This document shows, in pieces, positions 11,019-62,148 of a stretch of 64,000 nt of DNA. The stretch covers positions 124,001 through 188,000 of the IMG/VR virus record IMGVR_UViG_3300031251_000001; one strand, written 5' to 3'. Below the pieces are notes generated by a model, which saw nothing but the letters and a program-made list of their open reading frames with translations, was not told where the DNA came from and did no database searches. How positions within the stretch are numbered: the stretch's first letter is position 1; the number at the start of each line of letters is the position of its first letter. A program made the translations under genes and the position numbers.

Positions 11019-11303
11019 CTAACGGCCGGGGACGCGCTTGAACACCTGACGCTCGGTCGCCTGCCCCTGTCTGACGATCTCATCCTGGAGGTAGTCATAC
11101 AGGTTGATGATACCATCAGCGACGTTCGGCGGGCTGGGAGCGTTATTCAGCGAAGCGGTCATCGCCTGGGCTTGTTTGAGCAGCCAGGCCTTCTGCTTGT
11201 GAAGATCGCCGAGGCCCAGGGACAGGGTCACTTCGATCGTGACGCTTTGGTTGCGGGGCTTCAAAATACGTATTTTGGAATCAGACTTGGCTCGTTTGGC
11301 CAT
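11019..11303 (-). CDS. hypothetical protein
   Basis: 94-aa ORF with AAGGA RBS; contains palindrome copy 1. Confidence 0.55.
   Translation of the reverse strand: MAKRAKSDSKIRILKPRNQSVTIEVTLSLGLGDLHKQKAWLLKQAQAMTASLNNAPSPPNVADGIINLYDYLQDEIVRQGQATERQVFKRVPGR
11262..11277. promoter_or_regulatory. dispersed 16-bp palindrome CAAAATACGTATTTTG, copy 1
   Basis: exact match; 3 nt after the TGA of 11281..11790. Confidence 0.9.
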
Positions 11304-11790
11304 GGGTAATGTCCTTATACCGCCTGGCAGCCTCCCGGCCGTTCAGGTGGAGTGGGTAAGAGTCGAGATTGTCGAAGCCGTGGTAGAGACCGACGACCCG
11401 CCAGGCTTGTGCCCGTTCAAGAGGGTCATCGGAGCAGAAGGAGGCGATGAGGTCTTCCTCCCGGTTCCCATCGGTGATGCTGTCCAGGTTGGACAGGTAG
11501 GTGGTGTCCTGGGGCCGTTCCGCTCGCCTGGACTCCCGCGTGGCGAACCAGGCGGACTTGTCGGGATGGAACTTGTTGTCGCTCAGGACGTTGTTGATGT
11601 ACGTACACGGTTCCAGGTTAAACCGGTACACGGTGTAGCGTGATCGGCCGCGAGCGTCTTCGTCAACTTCCAGGTACTCGGCCTGGGGCGGATAGACGCC
11701 GGTCTCATCGACGAAGATGAAGTAGCCGCCGTGGTCAAGCGGGTTGGCGTCGCCCAGGTTGGCGACGAACTTCCACTTGGGTTGAGACAT
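11281..11790 (-). CDS. hypothetical phage protein
   Basis: 169-aa ORF with good codon pattern and packing. Confidence 0.75.
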   Translation of the reverse strand: MSQPKWKFVANLGDANPLDHGGYFIFVDETGVYPPQAEYLEVDEDARGRSRYTVYRFNLEPCTYINNVLSDNKFHPDKSAWFATRESRRAERPQDTTYLSNLDSITDGNREEDLIASFCSDDPLERAQAWRVVGLYHGFDNLDSYPLHLNGREAARRYKDITHGQTSQV

Positions 11791-13653
11791 GTTTGACCTT
11801 CTTCTTGAGACCGTGGATGGTCACAAAGAGAACGAACTCGTCACGTGTCGTGATGACGTGGTAGTCACGACGCAGGGTGTTCTCATTCTCCTGTGTCCAC
11901 TCCATGTAGCCCAGACGACGTGTGTGGTGACCGGGCGGCTTCACGTCCACTTTGATCCACTGGGGGTTGTTCATGGTGTGCTTTCTAATAATGCCACTTG
12001 GCGCCGTTTGGCGAGCAGGAAGTGGCGAACTTGCTCTCGAATATGCCCAAGACTGATCAAGGATGTCCGCGAGGCGTCTCAGCACTCGGACGGCACTTGG
12101 GAGCCCTGCACGACAGCGCTGCATGGATAAGACCTACTCGGGATCTACCTTCGCTTTCGGCTCGTCCTTTTCGGTGGTGCGTAGTTGTTCCACCAGTTCT
12201 TCATTCATTTTCTGCAGCTGGGCATTGTGCTTCTTGGTGTTGATGAGCTCGCTGGCGAGAGCTAGGACCAGGTTGTCGCCGGTCAGGTCTCGCCACTCTT
12301 CACCATGTCGCTGCGCCCGGAACTTGCGGTGAGCTGACGGCATGATGACGCGGTACTTACCGTCCGCGATGTCAATCATGTCATCGGTGCAGACGAGTTT
12401 CTTCTCGGCCACGCTTCCTCCTTCAGGCAATACGCTTGCCGTGCTCATCGACTTTGGGATCGATGCTGAAGTCACCCACGGTGTTACCGTTGGTGTCGAT
12501 CAGCTTCTTGTTTTCGAGCTTTTCGCCGGCCAGGATGGCGGCAGAAACACTCTTGACGATCTTGTCGACTTCCTTCTTGGGGTTACCAACGTAGGCGTCG
12601 TTTTCGGTGCTGAAGTAGATTACTACTTTCATAATGGCCCTTCTGGGGGTTTAGCGTTCTTGAGCTCGTTGGCACACTTGATCATGTGATTGGCCATTTT
12701 GATGGCACTCTCAGGCGACAACGAGAGCCAGTCCATAGAGATAGGAAATTGCAACATCACCCTGCCCTTCTCTGGCACAGCGAAAATCGAGACGGTGTGT
12801 TCACCAGCCTCACTACGCATGGCAGGGTTGTTCTTCTTAGCCAATTCCAGGTCGTTCTGCTGGTAGATCAGTTTGACCACGTGGTCGAATGCCTTGTAGT
12901 CGGCCTTGCTGAGCTGGAGGGTGCCGTCGTCCAGGTTCTTGGCGTCATGCACCTCCAGCTTGAGATCCACCACGGGAGATTGCGTGCTGTCATACGTGCC
13001 CCAGGAGATCATGCCGTCGATGATGGCGTGATTGTTGGGATCCTGGAGCTGGCGACGCAAGGCGATACGCGCAGCTGGCAGGCTGGGTCCTTTGATGGAC
13101 ACCAGCCCGACCGCGTAGTCACCGTTACGGAGCTTCTTCTTAACGAAGACAGGGAAGAACATGGCTACTCCTCATTGGCGATACGATTGAGCAGGTCAAG
13201 TAAAGCCTGCTCGACCGCGACTCGTATCTCCAGTTTAACGTCCTCGGTCTGTGGTTCAGGCTGGACCAAGGGCGAACTGGTGATGTGAAGGACGTAACCC
13301 TGCCCCAGCTTCTGGTAGCTGTAGTCGAGACGCGGGACGCCGAGGGGCTTGGGTTCCTTGCGCTCGGGCCGATTGAGGATCTTCATTTCCTCTTTGGTGA
13401 CGCAGCGATGGATCTGCAGCGTCTTCTGTGCCCAGCCAAGCCAGCGGTTGAACTTATCACGGCGTCCCGCCATGAGGAAGTCGTCCATCTGGTCGCACAT
13501 GTAGAGGACGTGTTGGAGGTCGTCAGCGATCCGGGTGGCGTCCTCGTGCTGGTGCGGCACGTCAGGCGCGCCGGCGCAGCGCGACAGCAGATTCGACTTG
13601 GCCACTCGTCGCATGACGTCGACGATCTTGTGGCCGTGCTTATTGGAGATCAA
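11787..13653 (-). other. run of small/medium hypothetical genes (12134..12475, 12423..12632, 12629..13162, 13165..13653 and a small ORF near 11787-11975)
   Basis: consecutive minus-strand ORFs with overlapping or adjacent stop/start codons and GGAG RBSs; no recognisable family. Confidence 0.65.
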
Positions 13654-14417
13654 TACTGGCTTACCTCCGACATGAAGCGTTCGTCAGCGGCGTGAATGAA
13701 CGCTTTGAACAGGTTGATGTCCAGGGCCGAGCTGGTCTCAGAGTGAGGGTGCCACTGGACGCCAATGCAGAACCAGAGGGGATCGACAGGCTCGATCGCC
13801 TCGATCACGCTGTCCAGAGCCATCGCACAGACCTTGAACCCCGGTCCCGTCTTGTGGACGGCCTGCGAGTGATAACTATTGACCCGGATCTCGCCCGGCT
13901 GGTCGTAGATCTTATCGAGCTGGGTCTTGGGGAGGATGTTGATCGCGTGACGGTGCGGGCCGCCAGTGATGTCCTTGTGCGGCAACGCCTTGGGCATATC
14001 TTCAGCGATGTAGGCGTAGTTGGTGCCGCCCGTCACCAGGTTGAGTTCCAGCATCCCGTTGGCAATCGCCAGGATCGGGAGCTTCTTGCTGACCGCGTAC
14101 TGGGCCAGGGCAAAATCAAAATCCTCCTTGATCTTGTTCATTTCCCTGCCGGAGGGATGTGTCAATTGCTTGGTTCGCCTCTGACTGATGCAGTCGGGCG
14201 AGCCGGCCAGGATGATGCCATTCAGGCGATCAAGGAGGCCGTAGTCCATGTACTCGAGCGCAACAGGAGCCAGGAGAATCGGGCTTCCTTCGGCCTGGTT
14301 GACGCAATCGATATAGCCGGCATGCAGACGGGTTTGAGCCCCAGCGATCTTCCCCGCCGGCATATAGTCCAGGTTAATTCCAATCAGTGGTCGCACGTTA
14401 CCAGCCTTTCTCTTCAA
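13650..14417 (-). CDS. gamma-glutamyl-gamma-aminobutyrate hydrolase / peptidase C26 family protein (class I GATase fold), catalytic Cys absent
   Basis: RPLIGIN, LDRLNGIILAG, LPILAIANGM (canonical GICRG), EIRVNSYHSQAV, IEAIE, IGVQWHPH (canonical WHPE). Confidence 0.88.
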   Translation of the reverse strand: MKRKAGNVRPLIGINLDYMPAGKIAGAQTRLHAGYIDCVNQAEGSPILLAPVALEYMDYGLLDRLNGIILAGSPDCISQRRTKQLTHPSGREMNKIKEDFDFALAQYAVSKKLPILAIANGMLELNLVTGGTNYAYIAEDMPKALPHKDITGGPHRHAINILPKTQLDKIYDQPGEIRVNSYHSQAVHKTGPGFKVCAMALDSVIEAIEPVDPLWFCIGVQWHPHSETSSALDINLFKAFIHAADERFMSEVSQY

Positions 14418-14700
14418 CGTGTTTCGTCAGGATGTCATAGAGCTCTTTGTTATAGGGGTTGCTCCAGCGGTCTGGGCCAACGTCGAAGACAACCACCTTG
14501 TCGCGGCACCCGTTCGGTACCGCACTAATGAAATGAGGCTGCAGGAGGACAATGTGATCTGCCCACATGGCGTTCCAGTGGATAGCGTCGGGGCTGGTGT
14601 GAGCACCGGCCGCGATCGCCTGGTAACCCTTGGCGTGCAAGACACGAGTCAAGCACACCGAGCGACTGTGACCATACTGGCAGACGCAGAGGAACCTCAT
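14398..14700 (-). CDS. low-molecular-weight phosphotyrosine-phosphatase-like protein
   Basis: MRFLCVCQYGHSRS: CX5R(S) P-loop right after the N-terminal beta strand; WADHIV; DVGPD. Confidence 0.65.
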   Translation of the reverse strand: MRFLCVCQYGHSRSVCLTRVLHAKGYQAIAAGAHTSPDAIHWNAMWADHIVLLQPHFISAVPNGCRDKVVVFDVGPDRWSNPYNKELYDILTKHVEEKGW

Positions 14701-15125
14701 GCCGCCACCGTGTTCCTTCCTTTGACTGTGGACCCGAGCAGGATGGCGACCTTACCCCAGTTGCAATCGTTGATGGCATCTTGCAGGGTATCGCGGAAGT
14801 GGGCAAGGACCTCCAGCTGATCTTCACCGCGAGCCAGGATTCTCAGCTCGTGACCGTCGAAGGAGATTGCAAAGGGGAGAGGCGTCAACGGGGCCATGAC
14901 CGGCGGTTCCATCCCTAATTCCTTACGGATAGAGATAAATATGTCGGGCATGCGCTGCTCGACGAACTCCAGAAAGTCCTTTTTGTCGACACGGCGATCA
15001 CCTGGTTTGCCATCCACGGTGGGGAGCCGTGTTCCCTTGAGCAAGCCACCATCGATCCACTTGCTCGTGGTTCGCGGGGCCACACCGCACATTTTCGAGA
15101 TGTCACCAGTCGTTAACTGATCCAT
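14697..15125 (-). CDS. excisionase/MerR-like HTH DNA-binding protein
   Basis: LTTGDISKMCGVAPRTTSKWIDGGLLKGTRLP..GDRRV; resembles the N-terminal HTH of planctomycete regulators (TTGQVAKICKVAPRTVSKWFDSG, recalled). Confidence 0.8.
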   Translation of the reverse strand: MDQLTTGDISKMCGVAPRTTSKWIDGGLLKGTRLPTVDGKPGDRRVDKKDFLEFVEQRMPDIFISIRKELGMEPPVMAPLTPLPFAISFDGHELRILARGEDQLEVLAHFRDTLQDAINDCNWGKVAILLGSTVKGRNTVAA

Positions 15126-18541: not shown

Positions 18542-18946
18542 ATGTTCAACGCTACGAATACCAAAGCCCAGGCGATTGCCCAGACGCTGGATAAGAGTGT
18601 GCAGGGGTTCCTGCCCATCCTGATCATCGTGCAGATCATCGCTGCGGTACTGCCCGAGCTGATCAAGTGCTTCATCCCCAAGGACCCCGCCCAGGCCAAG
18701 GATTACGTCAACAAGCGTTATACCGCTGCCAACCATGGTGATCAGTATGGTGGCTACAACCCGGTCACAGTCAAGCGGGTCATGAAGCTGGTACGTAGCC
18801 AAGCCGCGACTCACGGGCACCACGACATGAGTGATCCCGCTGCTCGCGATGCCGCGATCAAGATGCTGGAAGACATCCGCACCAGCGACCCCCAGAGCAT
18901 GCAGGACGTCATGACAGAGACATACCAGTCACTGAAGCGCAACTAG
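18542..18946 (+). CDS. hypothetical membrane protein (one of two plus-strand genes)
   Basis: AAGGA RBS before ATG 18542; hydrophobic FLPILIIVQIIAAVLPELIKCF; fills a gap with no minus-strand gene. Confidence 0.75.
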   Translation: MFNATNTKAQAIAQTLDKSVQGFLPILIIVQIIAAVLPELIKCFIPKDPAQAKDYVNKRYTAANHGDQYGGYNPVTVKRVMKLVRSQAATHGHHDMSDPAARDAAIKMLEDIRTSDPQSMQDVMTETYQSLKRN

Positions 18947-19415
18947 CCGGCGTGACGGGTGCAACAGGCAACAGGGTCATTGGTCCATCGACCAGTGACC
19001 CTGTTAGTTTTTGTATCACCTGCAGCATGGGTTTCTGGGGCTGCTGACGATGCAGCTCTTTGAGACGTGTTTGCGTGCGACCCATGTTGTAGGCAATAGT
19101 CCTGATCTGACGTCGCGAGGTCATCCCGCCCCGAATCTCCTTCATTGCCGTCGCCAGGATACAGCCATAGGTGTGGCGGTGGGAGTGGAAGTAGAACAGG
19201 CTGAGTGACGGTGGTAGCCACCACTCACCGATCGTGGCCCCAGCCAGACCACCGACGTTCTTGTCTTTGGAGAGATAGGCAATCACCCGGTCGGTATAAG
19301 CGATGATGACTGCCTTTTCCGGGAGATCCATCGTTGCCTCGACGTACTTGGCGAAGAGGCTCAGGCAAGTGCTACGCATGTCGAACGCCACATCACAATT
19401 ATCTTCAGCAAACAT
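18909..19415 (-). CDS. hypothetical protein
   Basis: long ORF; start uncertain (track ORF 18909..19595 overlaps the upstream gene). Confidence 0.55.
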   Translation of the reverse strand: MFAEDNCDVAFDMRSTCLSLFAKYVEATMDLPEKAVIIAYTDRVIAYLSKDKNVGGLAGATIGEWWLPPSLSLFYFHSHRHTYGCILATAMKEIRGGMTSRRQIRTIAYNMGRTQTRLKELHRQQPQKPMLQVIQKLTGSLVDGPMTLLPVAPVTPASCASVTGMSLS

Positions 19416-19454
19416 GATCAGATCGTTGATGTTGAGCGTTATCAATTCGACCCC

Positions 19455-19470
19455 CAAAATACGTATTTTG
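19455..19470. promoter_or_regulatory. dispersed 16-bp palindrome, copy 2
   Basis: exact match; 3 nt after the TAA at 19474. Confidence 0.9.
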
Positions 19471-24328: not shown

Positions 24329-24344
24329 CAAAATACGTATTTTG
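24329..24344. promoter_or_regulatory. dispersed 16-bp palindrome, copy 3 (extends to 20 bp, GG...CC)
   Basis: exact match; 4 nt after the TAG at 24349. Confidence 0.9.
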
Positions 24345-26644: not shown

Positions 26645-26811
26645 GGGGCACCTCCTTGGTGTTAAATTGTGGTACTCAAACTACGGACCGTGAAAATCGT
26701 TCTGGGTCATGCTATGAAACCAGGAAGCCAGCCAGATGCTGAACAGGTAAAAAGCAATCCCAATCACGGTGAAAAGAATATCCAGTTTGCGTGAGATCAT
26801 AAAGCCCTCTG

Positions 26812-27132
26812 TTAGACATTGATTCCGCAGCCCACGTCCTTCCGGCAGACAGCACACTTCTTCACGTGCTTGCGGACACACTTCTTACAGAACGATCCGC
26901 AGTAGGTGGACTGCACGTCCTTGGTGCTGCTGCACTCTGAACAGGTCGGCTCCTCTTTCACGATATAGCACAGTGCTCCACACGCGGGGCACTCCCCCGC
27001 CGGTACCTCGCCGCCGACATCAACCCGTTGTGACAAGTCCTGGATGTCTTTGAGCTTGGCACCGGTATGGATCTTGCCGCAGTTGTCGCACTGGTACTTC
27101 TTGCCTGGTTCGACATCTTTTGGTGTTGTCAT
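26812..27132 (-). CDS. multi-CxxC zinc-ribbon protein
   Basis: CDNC, CPAC, CSEC, CKKC and further Cys pairs. Confidence 0.7.
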   Translation of the reverse strand: MTTPKDVEPGKKYQCDNCGKIHTGAKLKDIQDLSQRVDVGGEVPAGECPACGALCYIVKEEPTCSECSSTKDVQSTYCGSFCKKCVRKHVKKCAVCRKDVGCGINV

Positions 27133-27140
27133 GATGCTCC

Positions 27141-32859: not shown

Positions 32860-32893
32860 AACACAAACGGCAGGCTAGTTGTCTAGCCTGCCG
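32860..32893 (-). terminator. Rho-independent terminator closing the structural cluster's upstream unit
   Basis: 11-bp stem CGGCAGGCTAG-acaa-CTAGCCTGCCG followed by TTTGTGTT. Confidence 0.65.
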
Positions 32894-34472: not shown

Positions 34473-34488
34473 CAAAATACGTATTTTG
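34473..34488. promoter_or_regulatory. dispersed 16-bp palindrome, copy 4
   Basis: exact match; 2 nt after the TAA at 34491, just before the next RBS. Confidence 0.9.
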
Positions 34489-41184: not shown

Positions 41185-41218
41185 AAAACGAAAGACCCCA
41201 CGATGCAGGCCGTGGGGT
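41185..41218 (-). terminator. Rho-independent terminator abutting palindrome copy 5
   Basis: GACCCCACG-loop-CGTGGGGTC followed by TTTCGTTTT. Confidence 0.7.
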
Positions 41219-41234
41219 CAAAATACGTATTTTG
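41219..41234. promoter_or_regulatory. dispersed 16-bp palindrome, copy 5
   Basis: exact match; intergenic, 11 nt after the stop at 41246. Confidence 0.9.
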
Positions 41235-41524
41235 GATTCAGCGTGTCACTTAGGCTTGCCTGTTTGCGTACGAAAGAGGAAGCCGTCGTCCATTGAGACA
41301 GCGTCCGGGTATTCGTAGTCAAGGTTGGGCCAGTAGGTGACCGCCCAGCAGCGAAGCGACTTGTCACGGTAGATGCAATACTGCGGGAAGTCCTCATCGG
41401 CCATCTGGATAGAAAAGCCGATGTGGTCCGGACTGTCCTTGAACCATGTCAGGCGAAGCTGCGGTCGGGACAGCAAGAAGAGCAGCAAGGCAAAGACCAA
41501 GGCTTGGCGGATGATGATCATTGG

Positions 41525-47358: not shown

Positions 47359-48399
47359 TTAGATGCTCTGTAGCATAGCGTCGGTCTCAGGTGTCGTACA
47401 GAGCAAGTGACGTGAAGGTTGGATGACAAGCTGCGTCACCGCTCGGGTGTGCTCCACCTGTAATTCTGGGCCGATCTGGGCATCCCGCCACTCATCGCCG
47501 ATTCTCACAACTGGCACTAGATAAATGAAACGATCATTAGCCTTGCGACAGCGGTAGGCGACGAGGCCCACCGCGTGGCTTTGATCATGGCCGAGCAGCA
47601 CGATTTCATTCTGCCGCAAACGGCAGGCGATAGAGTTCACGCTTTAAGTACCTCCATGACGACAACATCCCCTTTGCGGAGATACCCACGGTCAGGTAGG
47701 CCCTTGAGGTGCAGAATGCCGTTCAGCATGTAAGTGCGGTTGATCACCGATTCAACGGACATCTCCCGGAGCGACGGAGAGAACATGAACGACCGCATCA
47801 AGAAGGTATGCCGCTCCTGGTTATAGTCGAGGATCTCGGCCGAGATGTAGTAGCTCATGAGTTCCACTGGTCTCCGTTTTCGGCCGCTGCCTTCAGCAAG
47901 CGGTCAACCGCATCGGGATAATCCTCGCAATGCTGGCTGAAACCGACACCGTTCTCGCAGGTAGAATAGTGCCAGCGCTTGTCACCCTCATAGGAGATGG
48001 CCCGGTACTCCTTGACGCTAATGTTAACTTGAGCCTTGGTGAACTCTATCTGAACGAGTCTGGTTTTCATGGCGATCAAGCACGCTCTTCTGTCTGCCTC
48101 GACCACTCTGACTTCCAGACCACCAACATCAATCGTCAGCGTTCGCATGTGTTCTCCTGGTGTGCAAAATACGTATTTTGGAATCAGACAGCGACAGGCT
48201 TGGCGTCAACGAGCTTGCCGTCGATCCAGGCGTAGTTGACAGGGTCAGCACTCTCAGTGACGCGACGATCAGTGACCAGCACCCAACGGCACTCCAGGTC
48301 CTTGCCGTAGGCCTCAGCCTCCTCACGAGTGGCTAACCGCACAGCGTTGCTGTTCCACTCTTTACTGCGATCAGCGATGACTTCGACTTTGAAACTCAT
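47359..48399 (-). other. small hypothetical genes 47359..47640, 47637..47867, 47855..48148, 48184..48399
   Basis: consecutive minus-strand ORFs with RBSs. Confidence 0.65.
48165..48180. promoter_or_regulatory. dispersed 16-bp palindrome, copy 6
   Basis: exact match; 3 nt after the TGA at 48184, before an AGGAG RBS. Confidence 0.9.
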
Positions 48400-50645: not shown

Positions 50646-51836
50646 TTACTTCCCTTTGTTGAGGATGACCATCACCGTCTTAATCGTCGTCCCCGACTCT
50701 TTGAACGCCGCGACAGGGAGTTCCTTAATCTTGCCGTTCTTCTTGATCAGTTCGACCAGCTCGTTGTGCAGCGCTGTGCCACGGAACTGAACAGAGCCAG
50801 AGGCGATCGACACCAGCCTGCCGCCCGGTTTAAGCATCTTCCAGGCGTGCAGGATGTGCTTGATGTCCTGCATCTTAGTGAACGGCGGATTCATGACGAT
50901 ACGGTCGTACTGGGTGACCAGCGAGGGACTGTTGAAGGTGAGGAAGTCTTGCTGCCAGACCGCGTAACTCTTCTCCACCAGGGCGTCGGCATCGTGCTTA
51001 TCCAGCTCCACACAATGCACATCGCAACCCAGGTCTTTCAGCCTCTTGGCGATGCGACCATCGCCGGCTGACGGTTCCAGGCACAAGTGATACTTGCGTA
51101 CCTGGGCCTCCTTCATCATCAAGTCGACGATCTCGGGCGGTGTGTAGAACGATTGCTTGGTCTGCTGGATATTGATCGCCTTGCCGGTCTTAATCCCTTC
51201 CCGGAGCAAGTCGATGGCTTGGCGGTTGGGGAAGACGTGGGTGCCGAGGTTGGACTTCCATTTACCGTCATAACCCAGCAGGACCTTCTTGAAAGCAGCG
51301 TAGACCTTGGGGGCGAGTTGACCTTCCGGAAGCGTGACGGTCAGAGCGTCATCGTCGATAGTGCAATTGTTCAAGATCTCTTTGATCTCGTCGGGAATCG
51401 TGCCGCGTGCTGCTATGGCCATTGCTTCCTTTCTCTTTTGTTCTTTGACCTTGTCTATTGCTTCTGGAAGATACTCCTCCAACCGACAGCCCTCGTTGTG
51501 CTTGGTGCGGTAGTGCCGAAGGATGTCTATCCAGTAGAGGTAAGACTTGTAATAACGAGTCTTGGTGTCGAGCAGTTTCTGCAACCTCGACTTCATGTAC
51601 ATCTCGGTGTTGTCGTCACCATATCGCTTGGCGGCAAACGTCGGACCCCGGTAGTCGCTGTAGATGTGTGAACGCAGCCTGACTGCGGCTTCCTTCTCGA
51701 ACAGCTCCAACGTCCCGCGTACGTGCTGCAGGACGTTAGCCAGGCTGTGTGGGTTGTTGTCGATATAAAGCAACAACATATCAGTGTCGTGGCTCGGTCG
51801 CCACTCAGTGTTAATATCCAGTAGCTCAGGAAGCAT
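50646..51836 (-). CDS. N6-adenine (amino) DNA methyltransferase-like protein, gamma-type motif order
   Basis: QSFYTPPEIV, CLEPSAGDGRIA (motif I), DFL, IVMNPPF (motif IV), AWKMLKPGGRLVSI, FKESGT. Confidence 0.85.
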   Translation of the reverse strand: MLPELLDINTEWRPSHDTDMLLLYIDNNPHSLANVLQHVRGTLELFEKEAAVRLRSHIYSDYRGPTFAAKRYGDDNTEMYMKSRLQKLLDTKTRYYKSYLYWIDILRHYRTKHNEGCRLEEYLPEAIDKVKEQKRKEAMAIAARGTIPDEIKEILNNCTIDDDALTVTLPEGQLAPKVYAAFKKVLLGYDGKWKSNLGTHVFPNRQAIDLLREGIKTGKAINIQQTKQSFYTPPEIVDLMMKEAQVRKYHLCLEPSAGDGRIAKRLKDLGCDVHCVELDKHDADALVEKSYAVWQQDFLTFNSPSLVTQYDRIVMNPPFTKMQDIKHILHAWKMLKPGGRLVSIASGSVQFRGTALHNELVELIKKNGKIKELPVAAFKESGTTIKTVMVILNKGK

Positions 51837-51843
51837 GTGTCTC

Positions 51844-53705
51844 CTATCGGCGGTTGCTGTTGCGGCCGCTATAGCCGTTGGTTGGTACGGGGTGACCCTC
51901 CAGTGCACGAATCCTCGCTCTGCAATGAGTGATACTCCACATGAACTTATCCATGCGACGGCGGGCGCTGGCGGTGTAAATCTGAAACGTGCCGGGAGGG
52001 TTACGGTTCTTGGGGTCGTCCTCAATCTTCTTGACCTTGATCAGCAGCTGTCGCATCTCCTCACGCAACTGCGGTATGGTCTCTTCCGTGTCGGCGCTCA
52101 TAGCTCGTCCTCGGTTAACACACCCTGGAACATGAAGTAGATAACGCCCTTGCAGGTAGTCGAAGCAATGAACGTGGCGTCGGCTGGCAGGCAATCTGTC
52201 TCACCCGCCACGATGATGATCTTGAATCGCTTCTCGTTCAGGGCTTCCTTGGTGGGTTGAGCGTAGCGCCAGAAGAGAGTAGGGACATAACGATAGTGCT
52301 TGGTGCCACTGTCGTAGTATTTCTCCTTTCGCATCGTGAACCCCAGCAGCTGAGAGTCAGGAGGAATGCGAATGAAGCTCGTAGTGACCCATTGCCGTTC
52401 GATGGAGTGCAGCTCCGCAGAGCCGATTCGATGCGTGTCCATGGTCACTTGCCTTTCCGTTTCTTTTTGTTCTCGCTGAGGATGTCGTTCAACATGCACA
52501 CCAGATCCATGTTGTCGGGGAATCGCTGAGTCATCTTGGTGTACTCGACGATTCGCCCACCCATCGTCGTCTCGATGAAGTCGTAATAGTAGGCCCCGTC
52601 CGTGACGTCAGGCTCCACGAACTTGTTGGTACGCATCCAGTTGTCGATCACCAGGGCCATGTCATGGATTTTCTCCACGATGTCGGCGTGCGACTGATTC
52701 CGGTAGACCTCGTTCCATACCTTCAATCGAGACAGAGGGTGAATAACACCCTCGGTCAGATAGTAGGTAGTGAGAGCGACGTCGCGCAGCTTGTTGGCGT
52801 CGTACAGCCGAGGTATGCCGTTTGGGTGCGTAGGTGGGCGGGAGGGGACGTTTGAGTTTGCGGACATATTTGGGCTTCTCTCGGTTACAGAGGATGGAAA
52901 TGGCGAGCTTGAGAGTATGGTACTCCTCACGATCAATGTAGAGCGTGAGCAGGTGTTGATTGCCGAAACCGATGTCATGCGTGCGTTCGTGCTTGATGAC
53001 TCGCACCAGCTTGAGACCGGGTTCCTTGTTAAGCACATCCATCGTGTCGTCCAGGAACTTGTCGGGTACGGTGAGTCTCACCTCGACCAGGCCCTCACGC
53101 TGCAGGCCTATCAGGATGTTTGGTTGGCGTGCCTTGATCAGGCCGAGACGAAACTTGAACTGCTGAAAGGCAGCGCCGGCTGTATTGGCCTGATGGGCGG
53201 CCTCCATGTGCATGTTCCACTTGCCGCTGTGCGGATTGACGTCTGGAAGTTGAGCAGTGACAGCCCGCTCGGGTTCCTCGAACTTGAAGAACACTGTGTA
53301 GATAGTGTCTTCGGAGAACCACAAGCCACCTGAGACATTGACCAGGCCGCAGTCGGAATACAGGGTGACCTGGAACCGATCGAGCCAGGGTTCCTTCGTG
53401 TTGTTGCCGTCCAACGCCACCATGCCCAGCGTGAGCAGGTGCTCGTAGACCAGCTTGTCGAAGCGTTTGATGCGTTCTTGAATCTCTTTGGGGACGCGAC
53501 GTGCCATGAGTTATCCAATCTGAAGTTGACCACGCTTGTTGGTGGTGATGCCTTTGGAGCAAGGGAAAGAGCGACGACCATCTGGCCATGTCACAGATAC
53601 ACGTACTCCGTTACAACCCTCCAGGCTGCAAGGACGTATATTTCCAGAACACACGCCCTTCTGCTTGCCGTCGCGATCCAAGATGATGGTGCCTTTCTTG
53701 AACAT
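51844..53705 (-). other. hypothetical genes ~51844..52101, 52098..52442, 52445..52866, 52662..53507, 53511..53705
   Basis: consecutive minus-strand ORFs. Confidence 0.6.
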
Positions 53706-54639: not shown

Positions 54640-54652
54640 GGTGACCTCTAAG

Positions 54653-54724
54653 AGCCGGGGGCAAGATTTGAACTTACGACCTCGTGGTTATGAGCCACGC
54701 GAGCTACCACTGCTCCACCCCGGT
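54653..54724 (-). tRNA. tRNA-Met(CAT), initiator-like; CCA not encoded
   Basis: ACCGGGG TG GAGC AGTGGTA GCTC G CGTGG CTCATAA CCACG AGGTC GTAAG TTCAAAT CTTGC CCCCGGC T; full cloverleaf. Confidence 0.95.
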
Positions 54725-55749: not shown

Positions 55750-57365
55750 TTAGAGATCGTCCTGCTGAGGGTCAGCATCGTTGACGTGGCGGATGAAGCC
55801 ACGATGCAGCCAACCGTGAAAGCCGGGACGAGACGGAGCAATGAAGATAGAGGGTTTGACGGTAACTCGTGGCACGGTGCCCTTGCGTGACCAGGCCGGG
55901 TTGCTGCCTGAGCTGATCGATGGCCCGTCGATAAACCAGTCTGAAATGTCGGGGCCTTCGCCACTGGGGTCAGACGGGCAGCGAACATAGAGACAGATGC
56001 CATCAGCACCCGTGAACTTATCCTTCTTACCGTCCGAGCCGCGCCACCAGGAAGCATCCCACATGGCTCCTGCTGGTGCTCTGACCGGCCCACCAGGCAG
56101 CTCGCTCAGGTGCAAGTGATACTCACCGCCCTTATCGTCCTGGTAGATCACCTCCCAGAACAGCTCACGATCCTTCTTCTCGAACGCCAAACCACAGCTG
56201 CACTGAGCCGGCCAGCGTGTGTCTTCGGCAAAGGGCGTCATGTCGCCATGCCCGCCCAGGATGCCGCGTGCCTTATCCTCGGCACTGATGACACCATCCT
56301 CGACTCGATTCAAAGCAGAGTGATAACTGTAGTCACCGCCCATCGAAGGACACGGCCCGCTACGGCTGCACCGCAGCCACTGATAGCTGCGGTCACTCGG
56401 TTTGATGAAGAAGCAAAGGATAGGTTTCATCATGGGTGATTCACCTTCAGGTTGTTGAACCAGGTCACGATGAGGACGAGCAGCCCCCACACGCCGATGA
56501 CAAACAAGGTGATCCAGAGTGGACTCATGACCCAGAGCCAAGACCAGTCGATGGCCTTGAACAGCTTGAGAGCGATGAACACCAGCTGTACGATGCCGAT
56601 GATGATGGCAATGACCATGATCACGAGCGATTCAAAGATTGCTTCACCGAAGGAGTTGAAGTCCATTCCATCCTCCAAAATACGTATTTTGAAACCTACT
56701 TGGCCATCACCAGCAGCATGAACGGCCAGGAGACCATCCACAGAGTGAACCAGTAGGGCAACGTGAACCCAGGAGCACCTTTAGCGACCAGGATGATCAA
56801 GGCCAGGACGAATCCGATAGTCAGATAGCCCAGCACGATGCCGGCCAGCAACCTGCCGGCGCCTTTACAGATCTTCCAAAGTGTTCGCATGCGGTACTCC
56901 GGAGTTCCTTACTCCAGTGTACCCTGTCGGCGTCTCCGCACACTGCGGAGCGAACCCCGTGGCGGGAAGTACCCGATGTCCTTGACTTGACCGTTATGGA
57001 ACACCACGCGGATGTTCTCAGGGCTGATGTGAGTGATGATCCCTTCGCGGCCGAGGAGTGACTTACCGCCGGCCAGGGTCTCACCAGTGACTTTAACTTT
57101 GGTTTGAGGTCGCATCGTGCTCTCGCTGTTTGTCCAATACTGTTGAGATATCGAGCAGGTACAGGCCGAACCAGATGGGCAGGCACACCGCCACTGCTAT
57201 CGACAGGACAACAATAACACCTGCGAGAACGGACATCAACCATTTACCGGCTGCTGACCAGGCAACGAGCCCAGCAGGGCTGCACAGCCAGAAGATCAAG
57301 ATGGCGACCGGGGCGATGATGAAGCCGTAAGCGGTTGCCCGCGTAAGGTGAACGAGGAAGCGCAT
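55750..57365 (-). other. hypothetical genes 55750..56433 (Cys/His-rich), 56430..56666 (membrane, IDWSWLWVMSPLW), 56696..56890 (membrane), 56909..57115, 57093..57365 (membrane)
   Basis: consecutive minus-strand ORFs with RBSs. Confidence 0.65.
56676..56691. promoter_or_regulatory. dispersed 16-bp palindrome, copy 7
   Basis: exact match; 4 nt after the TAG at 56696; its last G overlaps the GGAGG RBS of the next gene. Confidence 0.9.
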
Positions 57366-57568
57366 CACGAGGCCATCCTTTCCCGGAGAGCAGCCTCCTT
57401 GGAGCGAGGCCGCGGCCAACCATGACGGTAGAAATAATTGCAACACTTCCGGCAGTAGTAGCCCTGATGCTTACCTTTGTCATTGACGACAACCAGGACC
57501 CTGCTGTAGGGAGTCTCGCAGTCCTTATTTTGACACTTTTGCTTTGGTACTCGGCGGTGACGAGGCAT
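57365..57568 (-). CDS. small zinc-finger protein (GATA-like)
   Basis: CQNKDC-x21-CRKCCNYFYRHGWPRP; GGAG RBS. Confidence 0.6.
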   Translation of the reverse strand: MPRHRRVPKQKCQNKDCETPYSRVLVVVNDKGKHQGYYCRKCCNYFYRHGWPRPRSKEAALRERMAS

Positions 57569-58232: not shown

Positions 58233-58313
58233 GTTTGTCCTTGGGATGATCCCGTTTGACTTGGCCAGGAGTAACCCCGGCCGTCGACCACATACCAGTA
58301 CCCGGTCGTGGTG

Positions 58314-58376
58314 CGTTGTGCCGCCGAGTACCCACCAGGAGCACCCTAAGCAGCGGTAGGCCTACCGGTGGCCCCG
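58314..58376 (-). ncRNA. candidate novel structured RNA element, copy 2 of 4
   Basis: CGG GGCC ACCGGUA GGCC UAC C GCUGCU UA GGGUGCUC CUGGU GGGUACUC GGCGGC ACAACG. Confidence 0.75.
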
Positions 58377-58384
58377 TGAACTGA

Positions 58385-59103
58385 CTACTTGCTCTGGATG
58401 TTACAGCGGGCATCCCAGAACAGCAAGATGACGATGGTGACGACCAGGCCAATGATGCCGGCCGTGCCCCAGTAATAGTCGAAGCTGGAGTCAAACCAGA
58501 TCGCTGTCATGCAGAGCATGCAGGCTAGCATGGAGAGCGTGAACGCTGCGTATTTGGCTGGTGGATCTGAAGGAATTGGCTTGTTAAAAGCATCGCCCAG
58601 CAACCTGCGTAGCTGGGCGTCCTTGTCGAAGTGAGGCATCGATAGCTCCGTCATGCGGTATTATTTTCGGGTGCGAGCCCCAGCGGAACGAAAGAGTGAT
58701 CGTCAGGCGGCGGTGCAGCAACAGGGGCTGGTGCCGGCGGCTTGACGGGGGCTGCGGGTTGATTACTGAGTTTGAGTGGTGGGGTAGTCGATTGGCCTGA
58801 TCGTCGGCTACCCAGGATGCCGATGCCGACAGCTCCACCCATCGCTGCGGCCGGGCCAAAGAGCTTGAGCCCCCGCGAGAGAAGACCAGCCGTCTTGCCC
58901 AGTCCCATGCCGGTGTTGAGCAAGGCCCTGCGAAGCTGCCAGCCGGTGTAGAGTTGCTCCACGACGTCGGTGGCTTCCTTCTTCTCTTCGCCTACCTTGT
59001 CGGGCAGGGTGATGTCCTTGGGTGTGTGTTCCTGCCATCGCTTAGCCATCTCGGGCTTCTGAGAATACATCCATCTGCGCTGGGCCTTCGACTTAAACGG
59101 CAT
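58385..59103 (-). other. hypothetical genes 58385..~58621 (membrane) and 58651..59103 (MPFKSKAQRRWMY N-terminus)
   Basis: ORFs with RBSs lying between RNA element copies 2 and 3. Confidence 0.65.
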
Positions 59104-59288: not shown

Positions 59289-59298
59289 TGACTTCAGT

Positions 59299-62118
59299 CT
59301 AACAAACGGGCGGCTGCCCATGCGGTGCTGAATGAAGAATCATGTCCTCCAGTCGGAGGTTGACGTCGTCGAGGTAGACCGGGCTAAAGCGGATGCGAGC
59401 TTCCTCTTTGGTGCCGTAGCTCGACTGGACAGGCGGGTGCTGAGAGAGTTGCTGCTCCTGAACTCGCACCCAAGGCAAACCTCGCAGCTCATCGGGGAGC
59501 TTCTCGTAGTAAAGCCGGGAAGACCACTTCACCGGCGTCAACCACACTAGCTTGCCGTTCTCCTTCGACTCAAAGGTGGCGCCCTCGTAGACCATAAAGG
59601 TGCCACTTCGGAAGGCCATGATGGCGGTCACCGGTCCCACGCCACATCTGATCTCGGTGGCCAACCGCATGGTGGCCACCGTACGACGGTGCGGGTTAAG
59701 CGAGATCGCCTTGGTCCTGGTCGGAAGGAACAGGCCCGTGATCATTGCTACCAGGCTCCCCAGCAGGCTTCGGCGGTTCGACATGAGTTGCTCTCTTTTC
59801 CAAGTCAGCCAGCACGGGAGTGGCGACAGGGTTATGGGTCTTGTTCAATCTTAACTTAGACAAGGCAGCGCTGAGGTTGGAGGTGCCCTTCTCCTGGAGG
59901 CGACGAGCCATCACCTCTTCGCTGCCGGCATTGGGGGTGACGGTGGTTTTCTCCTGGCGAATGACTTTCACCCGTGCTCGACTCTGATCATTATCGGCTT
60001 CTTTCAGGATCTCGCCAAACGCTTCATGCGTTGCTTGCTCCTCAAAGACACTCTGTTCCTTGGCGTCCTTACGACGCTGCACACTGACAGGTCCATTCAG
60101 GGTGTAGTCGAGAAGCTCGTGACTGTGGCATCCCTGGGTGTACTCCCCTTTAGGGAGTGGGTGATCTTTACCTGTGATCTTCAGGGTGCGGAACTGGTTC
60201 TCCATCCGCGTCATCGCTGCCCTGACGTGCTCCTTAAACTCGGCAAAGGTGCCGACAAAGGCGTTGATGTGCACATCCGTCTCATTGGTCACGATGGCCA
60301 CCGGTTCCTCGCCGGCAGGCACTGCAGGAAGATCAGCGACCGGTGTGATAGACGGCACCTTCACGGTAGGCAGATAAAGCGGAATGCCGGGACCGTCACC
60401 CACCCCGCAGGTAATCCCGAAGTAGAAGATGTGCTTGATTGGACCCTTGGGTGGCTTCACCTCGCTGAATATCTCTGGATGCTCGAAGTGATTGCTCATA
60501 CTTACTCCCCTGGTTACTGGTATCTCTCGGCCCGCTCCCGACTCATCACGTAAAGCGACTCGCTCTGCTCGGTGGCACTGACTACCACCGTAAAGCTGCA
60601 GTCCTTGACGAAGCCCGAGCTGTTGAGCAGCCCTGGCCCTTTTGTATCCACTGCGTCATGGTCTGTATAGTCGATTATCTCGACGCCGTTACAGACCATG
60701 TGCGGAGAGCAGGGGGCAGCTGAGCCGTGGTGATTCCAGGTGCTGGCGTTCTGGAAGCGGATCAGGGTGCGGTTATGATCCGACAGCACCAGCATTTCTT
60801 TAGCTACGATGCTGTACGACTGACGATTGGGCAGGTTGAGCCAGGCGCGTGGGTTCGACATCGTGAGAGCGATGTTGAGATAGTTATGCCTCTTGCCGTC
60901 CTTGCTCACGTTAGCCTTGAAGGCCCCGATGATGACCAAGAAGATCGCTACGAAGCACATGGCGAAGAACCAGAGGATGCTGACAGCGTCCATGCTTACC
61001 CCTTGAGATGGAAGACCTTGATCAACTCCTGTCGCAGTTCTGGGTTGGCCTCCAGCACCTGGAGAGTAGTCTCCTGATCGGCAACAAGCAACTCCAACAA
61101 GGTGGTAGCCCACTTGACGACATACTCCTGCTTTGACATCAGCAGGTTGTCGAACTCGGTCGCACAGATGCCACACTGGCTGCGGTGGTCGCAGGTGGCC
61201 TTTCCACCCCCGACGAACTTGAGACCGACGTCGGAGGGGGCCGGAGTTGACCAACTGACCGGTTGCTTAAACTGTTCAACCACCTGAACCGCCTCATTCT
61301 TGCGAGCACGACAAGGCGACTTCATCTCCGCCGGGACAATGAAATCACCACAGCGCTTGCACCTGACGCACTGACCCTGGCCTGGCGGGTGCGACACAGT
61401 ACACCGCTCCATGCCCGGTTCGTGCGGTAAATTGAAAGGATGTGGTTCGCTGACGCCGAGTTCAGATTTGATTTCTTTACACTCCCATGTTTTCTTGTTC
61501 GAGTTGTAGTTGTACCAGTGCTCATGCACCGATGCCGGCTCGTCGAAGGTGAAGAGGAGCGACACCTCTTTGGGATCCTCGATGTCGAGGTGGAAAGTAG
61601 CGGAATGAGCATGGATGCCGTGGGAGACGGCAGCGTCCACGTTAATAAATGATGACGTGGAGGAATGGTCCGTAACCCTAGACAGGGTACGCACGGTGAC
61701 TCGTACCTTCTTGGTGTCGGGCCAGATCGGAAAATGGAAGAAGTAACGGCTGAGTGGCATGGTGGCTCCTGTGGAGGTGTTACTTATGATCTTTGACCAG
61801 CTGTTCACACTGCTGGGCATAGGTCTTGCCAATGAACTGCTGCTGGCGTAGAAATCCGAGCTTGGCTCTCGATGTCATCTTCTCCCAGAGCCGGGCTATC
61901 ATGGGCCTGATCTTATCCAGGCCGACGCCAGATCGGAAGCGGAAACGACCCTCGGACAGGTCCCCCGTCTCCTCCATGACTCCACCAAGCTCTTCGGGCA
62001 GCTGATCACCACCGTCACAATCGATGTCAGAGTACATATTGACGATGCGTTCAGCGGTGAACTTGCTAGGTACGTTATTAACCCCTTGTGAGGGGTAAGG
62101 CGAGGCGTAGATAGGCAT
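59299..62118 (-). other. hypothetical genes 59299..59784, 59696..60499, 60514..60993 (membrane), 60996..61760 (Cys-rich), 61780..62118
   Basis: consecutive minus-strand ORFs. Confidence 0.65.
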
Positions 62119-62132
62119 GCTTGCTCCTGGTT

Positions 62133-62148
62133 CAAAATACGTATTTTG
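62133..62148. promoter_or_regulatory. dispersed 16-bp palindrome, copy 8
   Basis: exact match; at the 3' end of the long leader containing RNA copy 4, before an AGGAG RBS. Confidence 0.9.

What the first reader, a model, noticed from the sequence alone, without database searches (positions are those of the whole stretch)
11262..62148. Eight perfect copies of the AT-rich palindrome CAAAATACGTATTTTG spaced every 5-10 kb, mostly right after stop codons
Seen: exact copies start at 11262, 19455, 24329, 34473, 41219, 48165, 56676 and 62133 (gaps 8193, 4874, 10144, 6746, 6946, 8511 and 5457 nt). A given 16-mer is not expected even once by chance in 64 kb, and this one is strongly AT-rich in a GC-rich genome. 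Six copies lie 2-4 nt after a stop codon, and most sit directly before the next RBS. The palindrome has no spacer and no variation, which fits a dimeric DNA-binding protein better than an RNA hairpin. Established analogies: parS (a 16-bp palindrome with an ACGT centre), matS/SlmA/Noc sites that organise chromosomes, and the many intergenic stoperator repressor sites of mycobacteriophage L5. Inference: either a genome-wide phage chromosome-organisation/segregation/ejection landmark, or a repressor roadblock network that silences this long co-directional gene array. The HTH protein at 14697..15125 and the zinc finger at 57365..57568 are in-window candidates for the binding protein.
Basis: partly seen in the sequence, partly recalled or inferred. 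Interest (0 to 1): 0.85.

Follow-up and report, generated by a model that had tools for sequence, protein, structure and literature searches.

The report
Evenly spaced palindromic protein-binding sites, jumbo phage
An uncultivated 214-kb bacteriophage keeps 22 identical copies of a 16-base AT-rich palindrome, evenly spaced in the tiny gaps between its genes and preserved letter for letter in diverged relatives, which most likely marks binding sites for a two-part DNA-binding protein that controls transcription along its one-directional genome.

Summary
The window holds 8 exact copies of CAAAATACGTATTTTG, none with 1-3 mismatches, against 0.1 expected. The window is bases 124001-188000 of a 214,229-bp phage contig with 22 exact copies. 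They are spaced more evenly than chance (CV 0.53 vs 0.96, P<0.001), and 18 of 22 lie in the 11% of DNA that is non-coding. Relatives at about 50-60% protein identity carry the same 16-mer at orthologous junctions (63/64 bases identical), while the flanks are scrambled (32%). Other sites have been gained or lost, and relatives at about 50% polymerase identity lack the motif.

Both flanks show the same independent preference (TC...GA) without covariation. The RNA hairpin is nearly unstable (-0.6 kcal/mol). Ribosome-binding sites abut the element, and one copy sits between the stops of two convergent genes. These points favour a symmetric duplex-DNA site for a dimeric protein acting as an orientation-independent transcription barrier or regulator. 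They fit a promoter, an RNA hairpin or a parS site less well; no ParB was found.

The binding protein is unknown. The closest analogues are dispersed phage operators such as L5 stoperators. I rate it a new variant of a known kind; its function is unproven.

The parts
11262..11277 (.). Palindrome copy P (CAAAATACGTATTTTG). Minus-strand layout: TGA-ttc-P. The start of the downstream gene is uncertain.
   Evidence: The orthologous site in relatives L129 and L314 carries a 1-mismatch copy with a change at the centre.
19455..19470 (.). Palindrome copy P. Minus-strand layout: TAA-ccg-P-GGGGtcgaa-TTG, the start of gene 18909-19445.
   Evidence: An exact copy sits at the orthologous junction in L129 (10309) and L314 (831), with unrelated flanks.
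24329..24344 (.). Palindrome copy P. Layout: TAG-acgg-P-17 nt-AGGAG-ATG, the start of gene 23179-24303.
34473..34488 (.). Palindrome copy P. Layout: TAA-tc-P-ggtt-GGAGG-caac-ATG, the start of gene 34145-34459.
41219..41234 (.). Palindrome copy P, 11 nt after the stop of gene 41246-41521. On the minus strand it is followed immediately by a terminator-like hairpin.
41194..41219 (-). Intrinsic-terminator-like hairpin (10 pairs, 7 G-C, then TTTCGTTTT) that abuts the palindrome.
   Evidence: The reverse order, terminator then P, occurs at contig positions 15539 and 84133 and in relatives L126 and L123.
48165..48180 (.). Palindrome copy P. Layout: TGA-ttc-P-cacacc-AGGAGA-acac-ATG, the start of gene 47855-48148.
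56676..56691 (.). Palindrome copy P. Layout: TAG-gttt-P-GAGGA-tgga-ATG. The ribosome-binding site abuts the palindrome.
62133..62148 (.). Palindrome copy P at the downstream end of a 261-nt intergenic region. Layout: P-aacc-AGGAG-caagc-ATG, the start of gene 61780-62118.
14697..15125 (-). Candidate binding protein, and a weak one: a 142-aa protein with an N-terminal HTH_17 (excisionase/MerR-like) domain.
   Evidence: Pfam E=2.3e-7. It is the only DNA-binding domain found among 150 small proteins. The syntenic homolog in L129 is only 41% identical over 37 aa. It has no PDB relative, and the AF2 model is unusable (pLDDT 38).

Best explanation
The palindrome is a high-affinity recognition site on double-stranded DNA for a symmetric (dimeric) sequence-specific protein. 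Each half of the protein reads one half-site. The effective site is about 20 bp: tc-CAAAATACGTATTTTG-ga.

The phage keeps one site roughly every 10 kb, almost always in the tiny non-coding gap between two co-directional genes, over its whole 214-kb genome. Nearly all genes point one way, and messenger RNAs must read through the sites, because ribosome-binding sites abut them. The most likely action is therefore on transcription elongation at gene boundaries. When occupied, each site would act as an orientation-independent barrier or insulator that cuts the roughly 200-kb one-directional gene array into separately controlled blocks. Occupancy by a phage-made protein would then set the timing of expression.

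Shown here: the sites, their symmetry, their spacing, their intergenic bias and their conservation. Inferred: that a protein binds them, that it is a dimer, and that the effect is a conditional block to RNA polymerase. The protein itself is not identified.
For: - **Copy number:** there are 22 identical copies plus one 1-mismatch copy on the contig, and nothing with 2-3 mismatches.
- **Rank among repeats:** it is by far the most repeated 10-14-mer in the portion of the genome then held, about 165 kb.
- **Intergenic bias:** 18 of 22 copies lie outside genes although 89% of the genome is coding (binomial 3e-14).
- **Spacing:** it is more even than random (CV 0.53 vs 0.96, P=0.0007; restricted to gene junctions P=0.0002).
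- **Conservation:** at four orthologous junctions in relatives with about 40-60% protein identity, the element is 63/64 identical while the ±30-nt flanks are 76/240 identical.
- **Symmetric flanks:** across 28 sites, position -2 is T in 16, -1 is C in 19, +1 is G in 16 and +2 is A in 19. A never occurs at -1 and T never at +1. The two sides do not covary (P=0.71 and 0.065). This is expected for two independent half-site contacts, not for a longer stem.
- **No flanking promoter signal:** nothing like a -35 element, nor any other conserved position, lies within ±45 nt.
- **Weak RNA fold:** the RNA hairpin of the 16-mer is only -0.6 kcal/mol.
- **Read-through:** the Shine-Dalgarno sequence abuts or overlaps the 3' end of the element at several sites (w56676 P-GAGGA; L129 P-GTGAGCC-ATG), so functional mRNAs must be transcribed through it.
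- **Independence from start codons:** contig site 210557 lies between the stop codons of two convergent genes, 2 and 6 nt away. Four copies are inside genes.
- **Link to unit boundaries:** a terminator-like hairpin directly adjoins the element at three sites in this phage and two in relatives.
- **Precedent:** dispersed repressor sites in short intergenic spaces that stop elongation are known in phage L5 (PMC9283540).
Against: - No binding protein is identified.
- The only recognisable candidate (HTH_17) is poorly conserved in a relative that has the identical site.
- If the sites block polymerase, the genes downstream need either relief of the block or their own promoters, and neither was shown.
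- Many terminator-like hairpins in this genome are followed directly by a start codon with no promoter, so the read-through logic of this phage is not understood.
- Perfect identity of all copies is unusual for a transcription-factor regulon.
- Even, genome-wide spacing irrespective of gene class fits a structural or loading-site role just as well.
- A palindrome reads the same on both strands, so orientation tests cannot be made.
Confidence: 0.4

Rival explanations
1. The element is, or contains, a phage-specific promoter. It would be a -10-like TATTTT read by the phage's own RNA polymerase and sigma factor, repeated along the genome as T7 promoters are, restarting transcription every ~10 kb.
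For: - The phage encodes a bacterial-type RNA polymerase (a beta + beta'-N fusion and a beta'-C protein) and a 208-aa sigma factor with regions 2 and 4.
- The element lies just upstream of genes.
- It directly follows a terminator-like hairpin at contig 15539, at 84133, and in L126 and L123.
- At w41219 a start about 6 nt downstream would fall inside the 5' arm of the terminator and so bypass it.
- TATTTT keeps the three key -10 positions. One scan hit pairs it with GTGACA at 18 nt.
Against: - Nothing like a -35 element is conserved upstream, although the sigma has a strong region 4.
- The perfect two-fold symmetry and the symmetric flanks are unexplained, and a palindromic promoter would fire antisense as well.
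- Start codons lie 7-25 nt after the element, so transcripts started from it would lose the Shine-Dalgarno sequence at several sites.
- One copy is between convergent stop codons and four are inside genes.
- A relative (L162) has terminator-SD-ATG for the UvsX/RecA-like gene with no element at all.
- Other intergenic regions carry ordinary G(G/C)TAnnAT -10-like motifs.
Confidence: 0.15
2. The sites are landmarks for genome organisation rather than gene control. They would be loading or anchoring sites for a spreading, sliding or bridging protein (ParB/KorB-like, SMC-like, or a condensing or topology factor) that must cover the whole 214-kb DNA. They sit between genes only because a fixed 16-mer is hard to encode.
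For: - Spacing is even over the entire genome regardless of gene class.
- Sites turn over between relatives while the spacing stays similar: 8.7 and 6.2 kb in L314 against 8.2 and 12.7 kb here.
- The 16-bp palindrome with a CG centre has the same format as parS or KorB operators (from general knowledge).
- Four copies are tolerated inside genes, and the position relative to start or stop is inconsistent where the gaps are long.
Against: - No ParB, KorB or partition ATPase domain appeared in the families listed by the Pfam censuses of about 260 proteins. The lists for two sets were cut at 25 families.
- No GERR motif was found in a plausible context.
- The sequence differs from parS outside ACGT.
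- There is no clustering near one locus as with chromosomal parS.
Confidence: 0.17
3. The element works in the messenger RNA. It would be an AU-rich hairpin or single-stranded platform just 5' of the ribosome-binding site, recognised by a phage translational repressor or a hairpin-specific endoribonuclease (like T4 RegA/RegB or Cas6-type enzymes), or acting as an S1-binding translation enhancer.
For: - The element is transcribed within polycistronic RNA.
- It lies 0-17 nt 5' of the Shine-Dalgarno sequence at about 20 of 28 sites.
- Both known 1-mismatch variants change positions 8 or 10, which would be loop bases.
- It is an AU-rich island in GC-rich RNA.
Against: - The hairpin is worth -0.6 kcal/mol alone.
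- No compensatory or G-U variation is seen in 28 copies.
- The flanking bases do not covary as a stem would.
- The 'loop' is itself palindromic, which an RNA hairpin does not need.
- One copy is between convergent stops, four are inside genes, and one is 47-100 nt from the next start.
- An enhancer would not need an invariant 16-mer.
Confidence: 0.1
4. The element is a small selfish or recombination cassette, a mini-palindrome spread by a nuclease, transposase or recombination, with little function of its own.
For: - Presence differs between close relatives as a clean ~16-24-nt insertion or deletion. It is upstream of the DNA polymerase gene here but not in L166, and upstream of the methylase gene in L123 and L314 but not here.
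- All copies are identical.
Against: - The sequence is conserved exactly at orthologous junctions across about 50% protein divergence while the flanks are randomised.
- The spacing is regular.
- Only 22 copies exist.
- No target duplications were seen, and no RAYT/IS200-type transposase appeared among the Pfam families listed.
Confidence: 0.05

Closest known systems
Stoperators of cluster A mycobacteriophages (L5, Bxb1): repressor sites in short intergenic spaces that halt elongation
   Same: Many near-identical copies are scattered through the genome in the short spaces between co-directional genes, next to stop and start codons. The proposed action is on elongating RNA polymerase (PMC9283540).
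   Different: Stoperators are 13-bp asymmetric sites, bound by a monomer, that work in only one orientation and belong to the immunity system of temperate phages. Here the site is a perfect 16-20-bp palindrome, spaced about 10 kb apart rather than about 2 kb. The phage is a 214-kb jumbo phage with no sign of lysogeny in the domains seen, and no homologous repressor is known.
Conserved inverted repeats (CIRs) of Streptomyces phage phiC31 and other dispersed phage operators (P1 C1 sites, SPbeta repeated element). From my own knowledge; these were not re-read here.
   Same: Highly conserved inverted-repeat operators are found in many intergenic regions of a phage genome and are bound by one phage regulator.
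   Different: Those belong to temperate phages with identified repressors, and their copies vary somewhat. Here all copies are identical, the binder is unknown, and the spacing is regular across a jumbo genome that encodes its own RNA polymerase.
KorB operators (OB) of IncP plasmids and ParB-parS. From my own knowledge.
   Same: Short perfect palindromes with a central CG, present in a dozen identical copies around a replicon, some far from promoters. They are read by a dimer that can act at a distance.
   Different: No ParB/KorB-like protein was detected. The sequence matches parS only at ACGT.
Start-associated sequences (SAS/ESAS) of cluster K mycobacteriophages
   Same: These are well conserved short repeats, 11-19 copies per genome, tightly linked to translation start sites of a subset of genes. 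They are conserved at orthologous genes and their function is still unknown. Some have inverted repeats just upstream (PMC3203893).
   Different: The SAS is a 13-bp asymmetric sequence that includes the ribosome-binding site and lies in one orientation. ESAS inverted repeats are imperfect with variable spacers. Here the element excludes the ribosome-binding site, is perfectly symmetric, and also occurs where there is no start codon.
T7-type phage promoters
   Same: Near-identical short sequences are repeated between co-directional genes along the genome of a phage that brings its own polymerase.
   Different: T7 promoters are asymmetric and are read by a single-subunit polymerase. Here the element is palindromic and too close to start codons, and the phage polymerase is multisubunit with a sigma factor that should need a -35 element.

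Membership tests
ParB-parS / KorB-OB partition or silencing sites | A ParB-family protein (ParB N-terminal domain with the GERR CTP-binding motif) encoded by the replicon | tested here: not met
   The Pfam censuses of 101+103+55 proteins and of 150 small proteins list no ParB domain. Two of those lists were cut at 25 families. The GERR regex hits nothing in a plausible context. About 4.3 kb of the contig was not examined.
ParB-parS / KorB-OB partition or silencing sites | Site matches the parS consensus (TGTTNCACGTGAAACA) or the OB consensus | tested here: not met
   Only the central ACGT is shared (direct comparison; the consensus is from general knowledge).
L5-type stoperators | Many copies in short intergenic spaces across the genome | tested here: met
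   22 copies, 18 of them intergenic, typically 2-4 nt after a stop codon.
L5-type stoperators | Asymmetric 13-mer whose orientation follows the direction of transcription, bound by a monomeric immunity repressor | tested here: not met
   The site is a perfect palindrome with symmetric flanks. The defining features are taken from PMC9283540.
L5-type stoperators | Binding halts transcription elongation | not testable with these tools
   This needs in vitro transcription or reporter assays.
Intrinsic (Rho-independent) terminator | Stable G+C-rich hairpin followed by a U tract | tested here: not met
   The hairpin is -0.6 kcal/mol with A-U pairs, and the U run lies inside the stem. The terminator scan reports the adjacent hairpin at 41219-41194, not the element itself.
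Sigma-70-type promoter | -35 and -10 hexamers 16-18 bp apart, conserved among copies | tested here: not met
   A -10-like TATTTT is present, but no position upstream of -4 is conserved in 28 aligned sites. Only 1 of 8 window copies passes the promoter scan.
Structured RNA element (hairpin operator or processing site) | Base pairs supported by covariation or stable folding | tested here: not met
   No variation occurs within the element. The flanks show no covariation. The fold is worth -0.6 kcal/mol. No Rfam match was found in the window.
Cluster K start-associated sequences | Asymmetric 13-bp repeat that contains the ribosome-binding site, 3-8 bp before the start codon, in one orientation | tested here: not met
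   The element lacks a Shine-Dalgarno sequence, is symmetric, lies 7 to more than 47 nt from starts, and also occurs between convergent stops. The defining features are taken from PMC3203893.

The most novel reading that the evidence does not exclude
The palindromes are the DNA part of a previously undescribed 'punctuation' system for a jumbo phage that brings its own bacterial-type RNA polymerase. A dimeric protein bound at evenly spaced, orientation-independent sites would stop, hand over or restart polymerase, or load a factor that travels with it. In this way a ~200-kb one-directional genome would be expressed as about 22 timed blocks. This would be protein-mediated termination or insulation of the kind known for eukaryotic Pol I and mitochondrial genomes, here used genome-wide by a phage.
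Probability: 0.15. Interest if true: 0.8.

Novelty: new variant of a known kind. Interest (0 to 1): 0.55.

Why it matters
How jumbo phages schedule the expression of hundreds of genes is largely unknown outside the phiKZ and AR9 groups. This phage belongs to a large uncultivated clade, with hundreds of homologs of its UDG-PolA polymerase and many contigs of 200-240 kb. It encodes a bacterial-type polymerase and a sigma factor.

The 16-20-bp site is invariant, conserved in position and evenly spaced. That gives a precise, synthesisable handle for three things:
- finding the protein that reads it,
- testing roadblock against promoter against loading-site models in vitro,
- reading the block structure of such genomes from sequence alone.

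If the site is an orientation-independent barrier, it could also serve as a compact insulator part for synthetic operons.

Tried and rejected
**Searches for relatives and outside occurrences**
- GenBank phages: megablast and tblastn with two large window proteins found no relatives.
- Literature search for the sequence: only an unrelated plastid paper.
- Bacterial and archaeal genomes scanned for the 16-mer: only scattered single copies in unrelated taxa, so no host regulon could be inferred.
- Relatives at 35-55% identity (L162-L165, L312): no copy and no substitute repeated palindrome within 12-23 kb.

**Functional models tested and set aside**
- ParB: not found.
- ECF-type promoter reading (AAC-N16/17-CGT using the central CGT): no AAC at the required distance.
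- MerR-type operator inside a promoter spacer: no -35 or -10 hexamers flank the element.
- Class I/II activator site: the start codons are too close.
- H-NS, NrdR, LacI-family and other recalled consensus sites: no convincing match. These comparisons were from memory only.

**Candidate binding proteins**
- HTH_17 protein: the homolog search returned only the protein itself.
- HTH_17 protein: no PDB relative.
- HTH_17 protein: the single-sequence AlphaFold model was unusable, with pLDDT 38.
- Zinc-ribbon ORF 57365-57568: no family.

**Other**
- L124, an unrelated contig with 5-6 tandem copies of a similar repeat, shares no protein with the phage.
- A first look-up of a relative's protein failed on the start codon; the second start worked.
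Full report
The pattern search finds exactly eight copies of CAAAATACGTATTTTG in the window, at the reported coordinates. Allowing up to three mismatches adds nothing. Shuffles give 0.10 expected matches. The window is 55-61% G+C, whereas the motif is 14/16 A+T.

A codon-usage gene call puts 103 of 107 window genes on the minus strand, so the context has to be read on that strand. Six copies begin 2-4 nt after a stop codon. Six are followed within 9-25 nt by a Shine-Dalgarno sequence and a start codon.

**2. Where the window comes from.** An exact-match scan of viral contigs shows that one contig holds 22 copies: IMGVR_UViG_3300031251_000001 (= Ga0265327_10000075, 214,229 bp). All other viral contigs hold one. 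The inter-copy distances place the window at contig positions 124001-188000.

I fetched nearly all the rest of the contig in pieces; only about 4.3 kb is missing. This was used only for coordinates and gene calls of this bacteriophage. The full set stays at 22 exact copies plus one single-mismatch copy at 33745.

The genome is a phage. It has a large terminase, baseplate J, a UvsX/RecA-like recombinase, a UDG-PolA DNA polymerase, DnaB, ThyX and one tRNA. Of 261 called genes, 251 are on one strand.

It also encodes a bacterial-type RNA polymerase and a sigma factor:
- a 1674-aa fusion of beta and the N-terminal half of beta';
- a 1233-aa protein whose first 500 residues are the C-terminal half of beta';
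- a 208-aa sigma factor with regions 2 and 4.

It has no close relative among GenBank phages. Its polymerase, however, has hundreds of metagenomic homologs, many on contigs of 200-240 kb.

**3. Distribution.** The element is the most repeated 10-14-mer in the roughly 165 kb of the genome held when k-mers were counted. Eighteen of 22 copies lie outside called genes although 89% of the DNA is coding (P=3e-14).

The four intragenic copies are:
- one in the last ten codons of the gene before the DNA polymerase;
- three deep inside genes.

Three of the four are read as K-I-R-I-L and one as Q-N-T-Y-F.

The gaps between copies range from 2.3 to 23.1 kb, with a coefficient of variation of 0.53. Random placement gives 0.96 (P=0.0007), and random placement on gene junctions gives 1.03 (P=0.0002).

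The copies precede genes of all kinds: UvsX-like, DNA polymerase, an SbcD-like phosphoesterase, ThyX, a 1466-aa protein with no family match, the operon holding the polymerase genes, and many ORFans.

**4. Anatomy.** I aligned 28 copies, 22 from this phage and 6 from relatives, in the direction of the genes. Nothing is conserved beyond four bases on either side. At -4 and -3 there are A's that belong to TAA stop codons. Then comes T/C at -2 and -1, mirrored by G/A at +1 and +2. A never occurs at -1 and T never at +1.

The two sides do not covary (offset 1 P=0.71; offset 2 P=0.065). The preference is therefore that of two equal half-sites, not of a longer stem.

As RNA, the 16-mer folds with only -0.6 kcal/mol. 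No Rfam family matches anything but the tRNA.

Terminator-like hairpins touch the element at five places:
- directly before it at contig 15539 and 84133;
- directly after it at window 41219;
- before it in relatives L126 and L123.

At contig 210557 the element lies between the stop codons of two convergent genes, 2 and 6 nt away.

At several sites the Shine-Dalgarno sequence starts at or overlaps the last base of the element: window 56676 has P-GAGGA, and L129 has P-GTGAGCC-ATG. The translated mRNAs must therefore include the element.

**5. Relatives.** Even so, it returned fragments of a related phage or phages from other samples (Ga0075158, Ga0075160, Ga0209174), with 40-80% protein identity to this one. 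A 20-kb ENA contig of the same relative was found through a shared protein.

Four junctions are orthologous and keep the element. Three copies are exact and one has a central C-to-G change. Across the four, 63/64 bases are identical, while the ±30-nt flanks are 76/240 identical.

Two junctions differ:
- The relative has a copy before the N6/N4 methylase gene, where this phage has only a terminator.
- This phage has a copy in a ~24-nt extension before the DNA polymerase gene that the relative lacks.

The spacing in the relative (8.7 and 6.2 kb) resembles that here.

Phages at 35-55% identity in the polymerase or a conserved ORFan in the structural region (L162-L165, L312) have neither the element nor a substitute repeated palindrome in 12-23 kb. 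They show ordinary -10-like motifs instead (GCTACAATA, CGTAAAATGA). In L162 a terminator is followed directly by the ribosome-binding site of the RecA/UvsX-like gene, where this phage has terminator-element-ribosome-binding site.

The element is thus an innovation of a narrow subclade. Within that subclade it is under strong purifying selection.

**6. What it most likely is.** The features below are best explained by a duplex-DNA site read by a symmetric dimer:
- invariance of all 16 positions, including a self-complementary centre;
- symmetric but independent flank preferences;
- negligible RNA stability;
- independence from start codons at the convergent junction and inside genes;
- strong avoidance of coding sequence.

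Because transcripts must run through the sites, and because several sites coincide with the boundaries of transcription units, I favour action on elongating polymerase. The element would be a conditional, orientation-independent barrier or insulator that divides the one-directional genome into blocks. This is an inference; no binding was shown.

The known analogues are dispersed phage operators. L5 stoperators sit in short intergenic spaces and stop elongation, but they are asymmetric, orientation-dependent and monomer-bound (PMC9283540). Cluster K start-associated sequences are conserved repeats at a subset of start sites whose function is still unknown (PMC3203893).

**7. Rivals.**
- *Promoter for the phage polymerase.* This is attractive because of the phage's own polymerase and sigma, the position after terminators and the TATTTT hexamer. 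It fails on the absence of any -35-like conservation, the symmetry, the short distance to start codons and the convergent site.
- *Genome-organising or loading site.* This fits the even spacing and the turnover of sites with preserved spacing. However, no ParB-like protein was found.
- *RNA-level operator or processing site.* This fits the position next to ribosome-binding sites and the fact that both variants change would-be loop bases. It is weakened by the stability, covariation and position data.
- *Selfish mini-cassette.* This fits the gain and loss of sites but not the conservation or the spacing.

**8. Candidate binders.** A syntenic homolog exists in the relative, but the HTH is only 41% identical. 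The gene lies next to no copy. The sequence search, the PDB search and the structure prediction gave nothing more.

The zinc-ribbon ORF (57365-57568) matches no family. A 124-aa protein just downstream of contig site 34418 has weak HhH/alpha-CTD hits. Most small proteins are ORFans, so the binder may well be among them.

**9. Verdict.** The feature is real, highly non-random, conserved and evidently functional. It is most like the dispersed operators of other phages but differs in four ways: it is perfectly symmetric, its copies are all identical, its spacing is regular, and its host genome is a jumbo phage with its own bacterial-type polymerase. I rate it a new variant of a known kind. The mechanism is unproven and the interest is moderate to good.

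Noticed in passing
window 62265-62385 and 58270-58390 (minus strand); also L039:4790-4910, L039:10730-10850, L001:3900-4020, L191:6548-6668: A second repeated intergenic element with a ~60-nt core, in six copies. RNAalifold predicts two hairpins of 20 pairs, 9 of them with compensatory changes. The loop CCUGGUGG and the tail GGCACAACG are invariant. There is no Rfam match at gathering threshold. Two copies lie 130-220 nt upstream of a palindrome copy. It is probably a structured RNA of unknown function.
   Followed up: partly
outside the window: contig 102635-107659 (L169:11464-16485:+), 96994-100695 (L168:2906-6604:+), 26732-27358 (L041:3526-4149:+): The phage encodes a bacterial-type multisubunit RNA polymerase in an unusual split: beta fused to the N-terminal half of beta' (1674 aa), and the C-terminal half of beta' as the first 500 residues of a 1233-aa protein. 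It also encodes a 208-aa sigma factor with regions 2 and 4. A separate protein gave a Sigma70_r3 hit that I did not locate.
   Followed up: partly
L124:200-340 (JAEEGL014491787.1, an unrelated metagenome contig): Five or six tandem copies of a very similar repeat (core AAATACGTATTT), spaced 21-31 nt apart, lie between an 843-aa gene and a small gene whose N-terminus looks like a winged helix. It looks like an operator or iteron cluster of an unrelated element. No protein is shared with the phage.
   Followed up: partly
window 4754-4731, 28837-28813, 40039-40018, 55743-55723 (minus strand) and others: Strong terminator-like hairpins with U tracts are followed within about 10-20 nt by a ribosome-binding site and start codon, with no room for a promoter. 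Either read-through or antitermination is the rule in this phage, or these hairpins serve as RNA-stabilising ends.
   Followed up: no
window-wide (e.g. 13650-14417 Peptidase_C26-like, 46273-47328 glycosyltransferase, 50646-52025 methyltransferase) and contig 121555-122499 (ThyX): There is a dense set of nucleotide and DNA-modification-type genes: dCTP deaminase-like, thymidylate kinase, ThyX, dUTPase-like, NUDIX, Peptidase_C26/GATase, several methyltransferases and glycosyltransferases, and PAPS reductase in the relative. This suggests the DNA may carry modified bases, which could matter for recognition of a T-rich site.
   Followed up: no
window 18542-18946 (+), with a 16-pair plus-strand terminator at 18970-19005: A lone plus-strand gene (134 aa, no family) sits in the minus-strand array. 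It is conserved on the same strand in relatives L129 and L314 and converges on the gene that follows palindrome copy 19455.
   Followed up: partly
outside the window: contig 32798-34023: A 1.2-kb stretch without convincing coding potential holds the only 1-mismatch copy (33745). It lies between the two closest exact copies (32138 and 34418). It may be a control or origin region.
   Followed up: partly
window 57365-57568 (minus strand): A 67-aa four-cysteine zinc-ribbon ORF was missed by my gene call and matches no Pfam family (best E=0.015).
   Followed up: partly
window 54652-54724 (minus strand); L034:1759-1977 (outside the window): There is a tRNA-Met gene whose only GenBank phage match is the tRNA-Met of Sinorhizobium phage phiLM21 (87% identity over 58 nt). 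A Tad2-like (anti-Thoeris) protein is encoded near the contig start.
   Followed up: no
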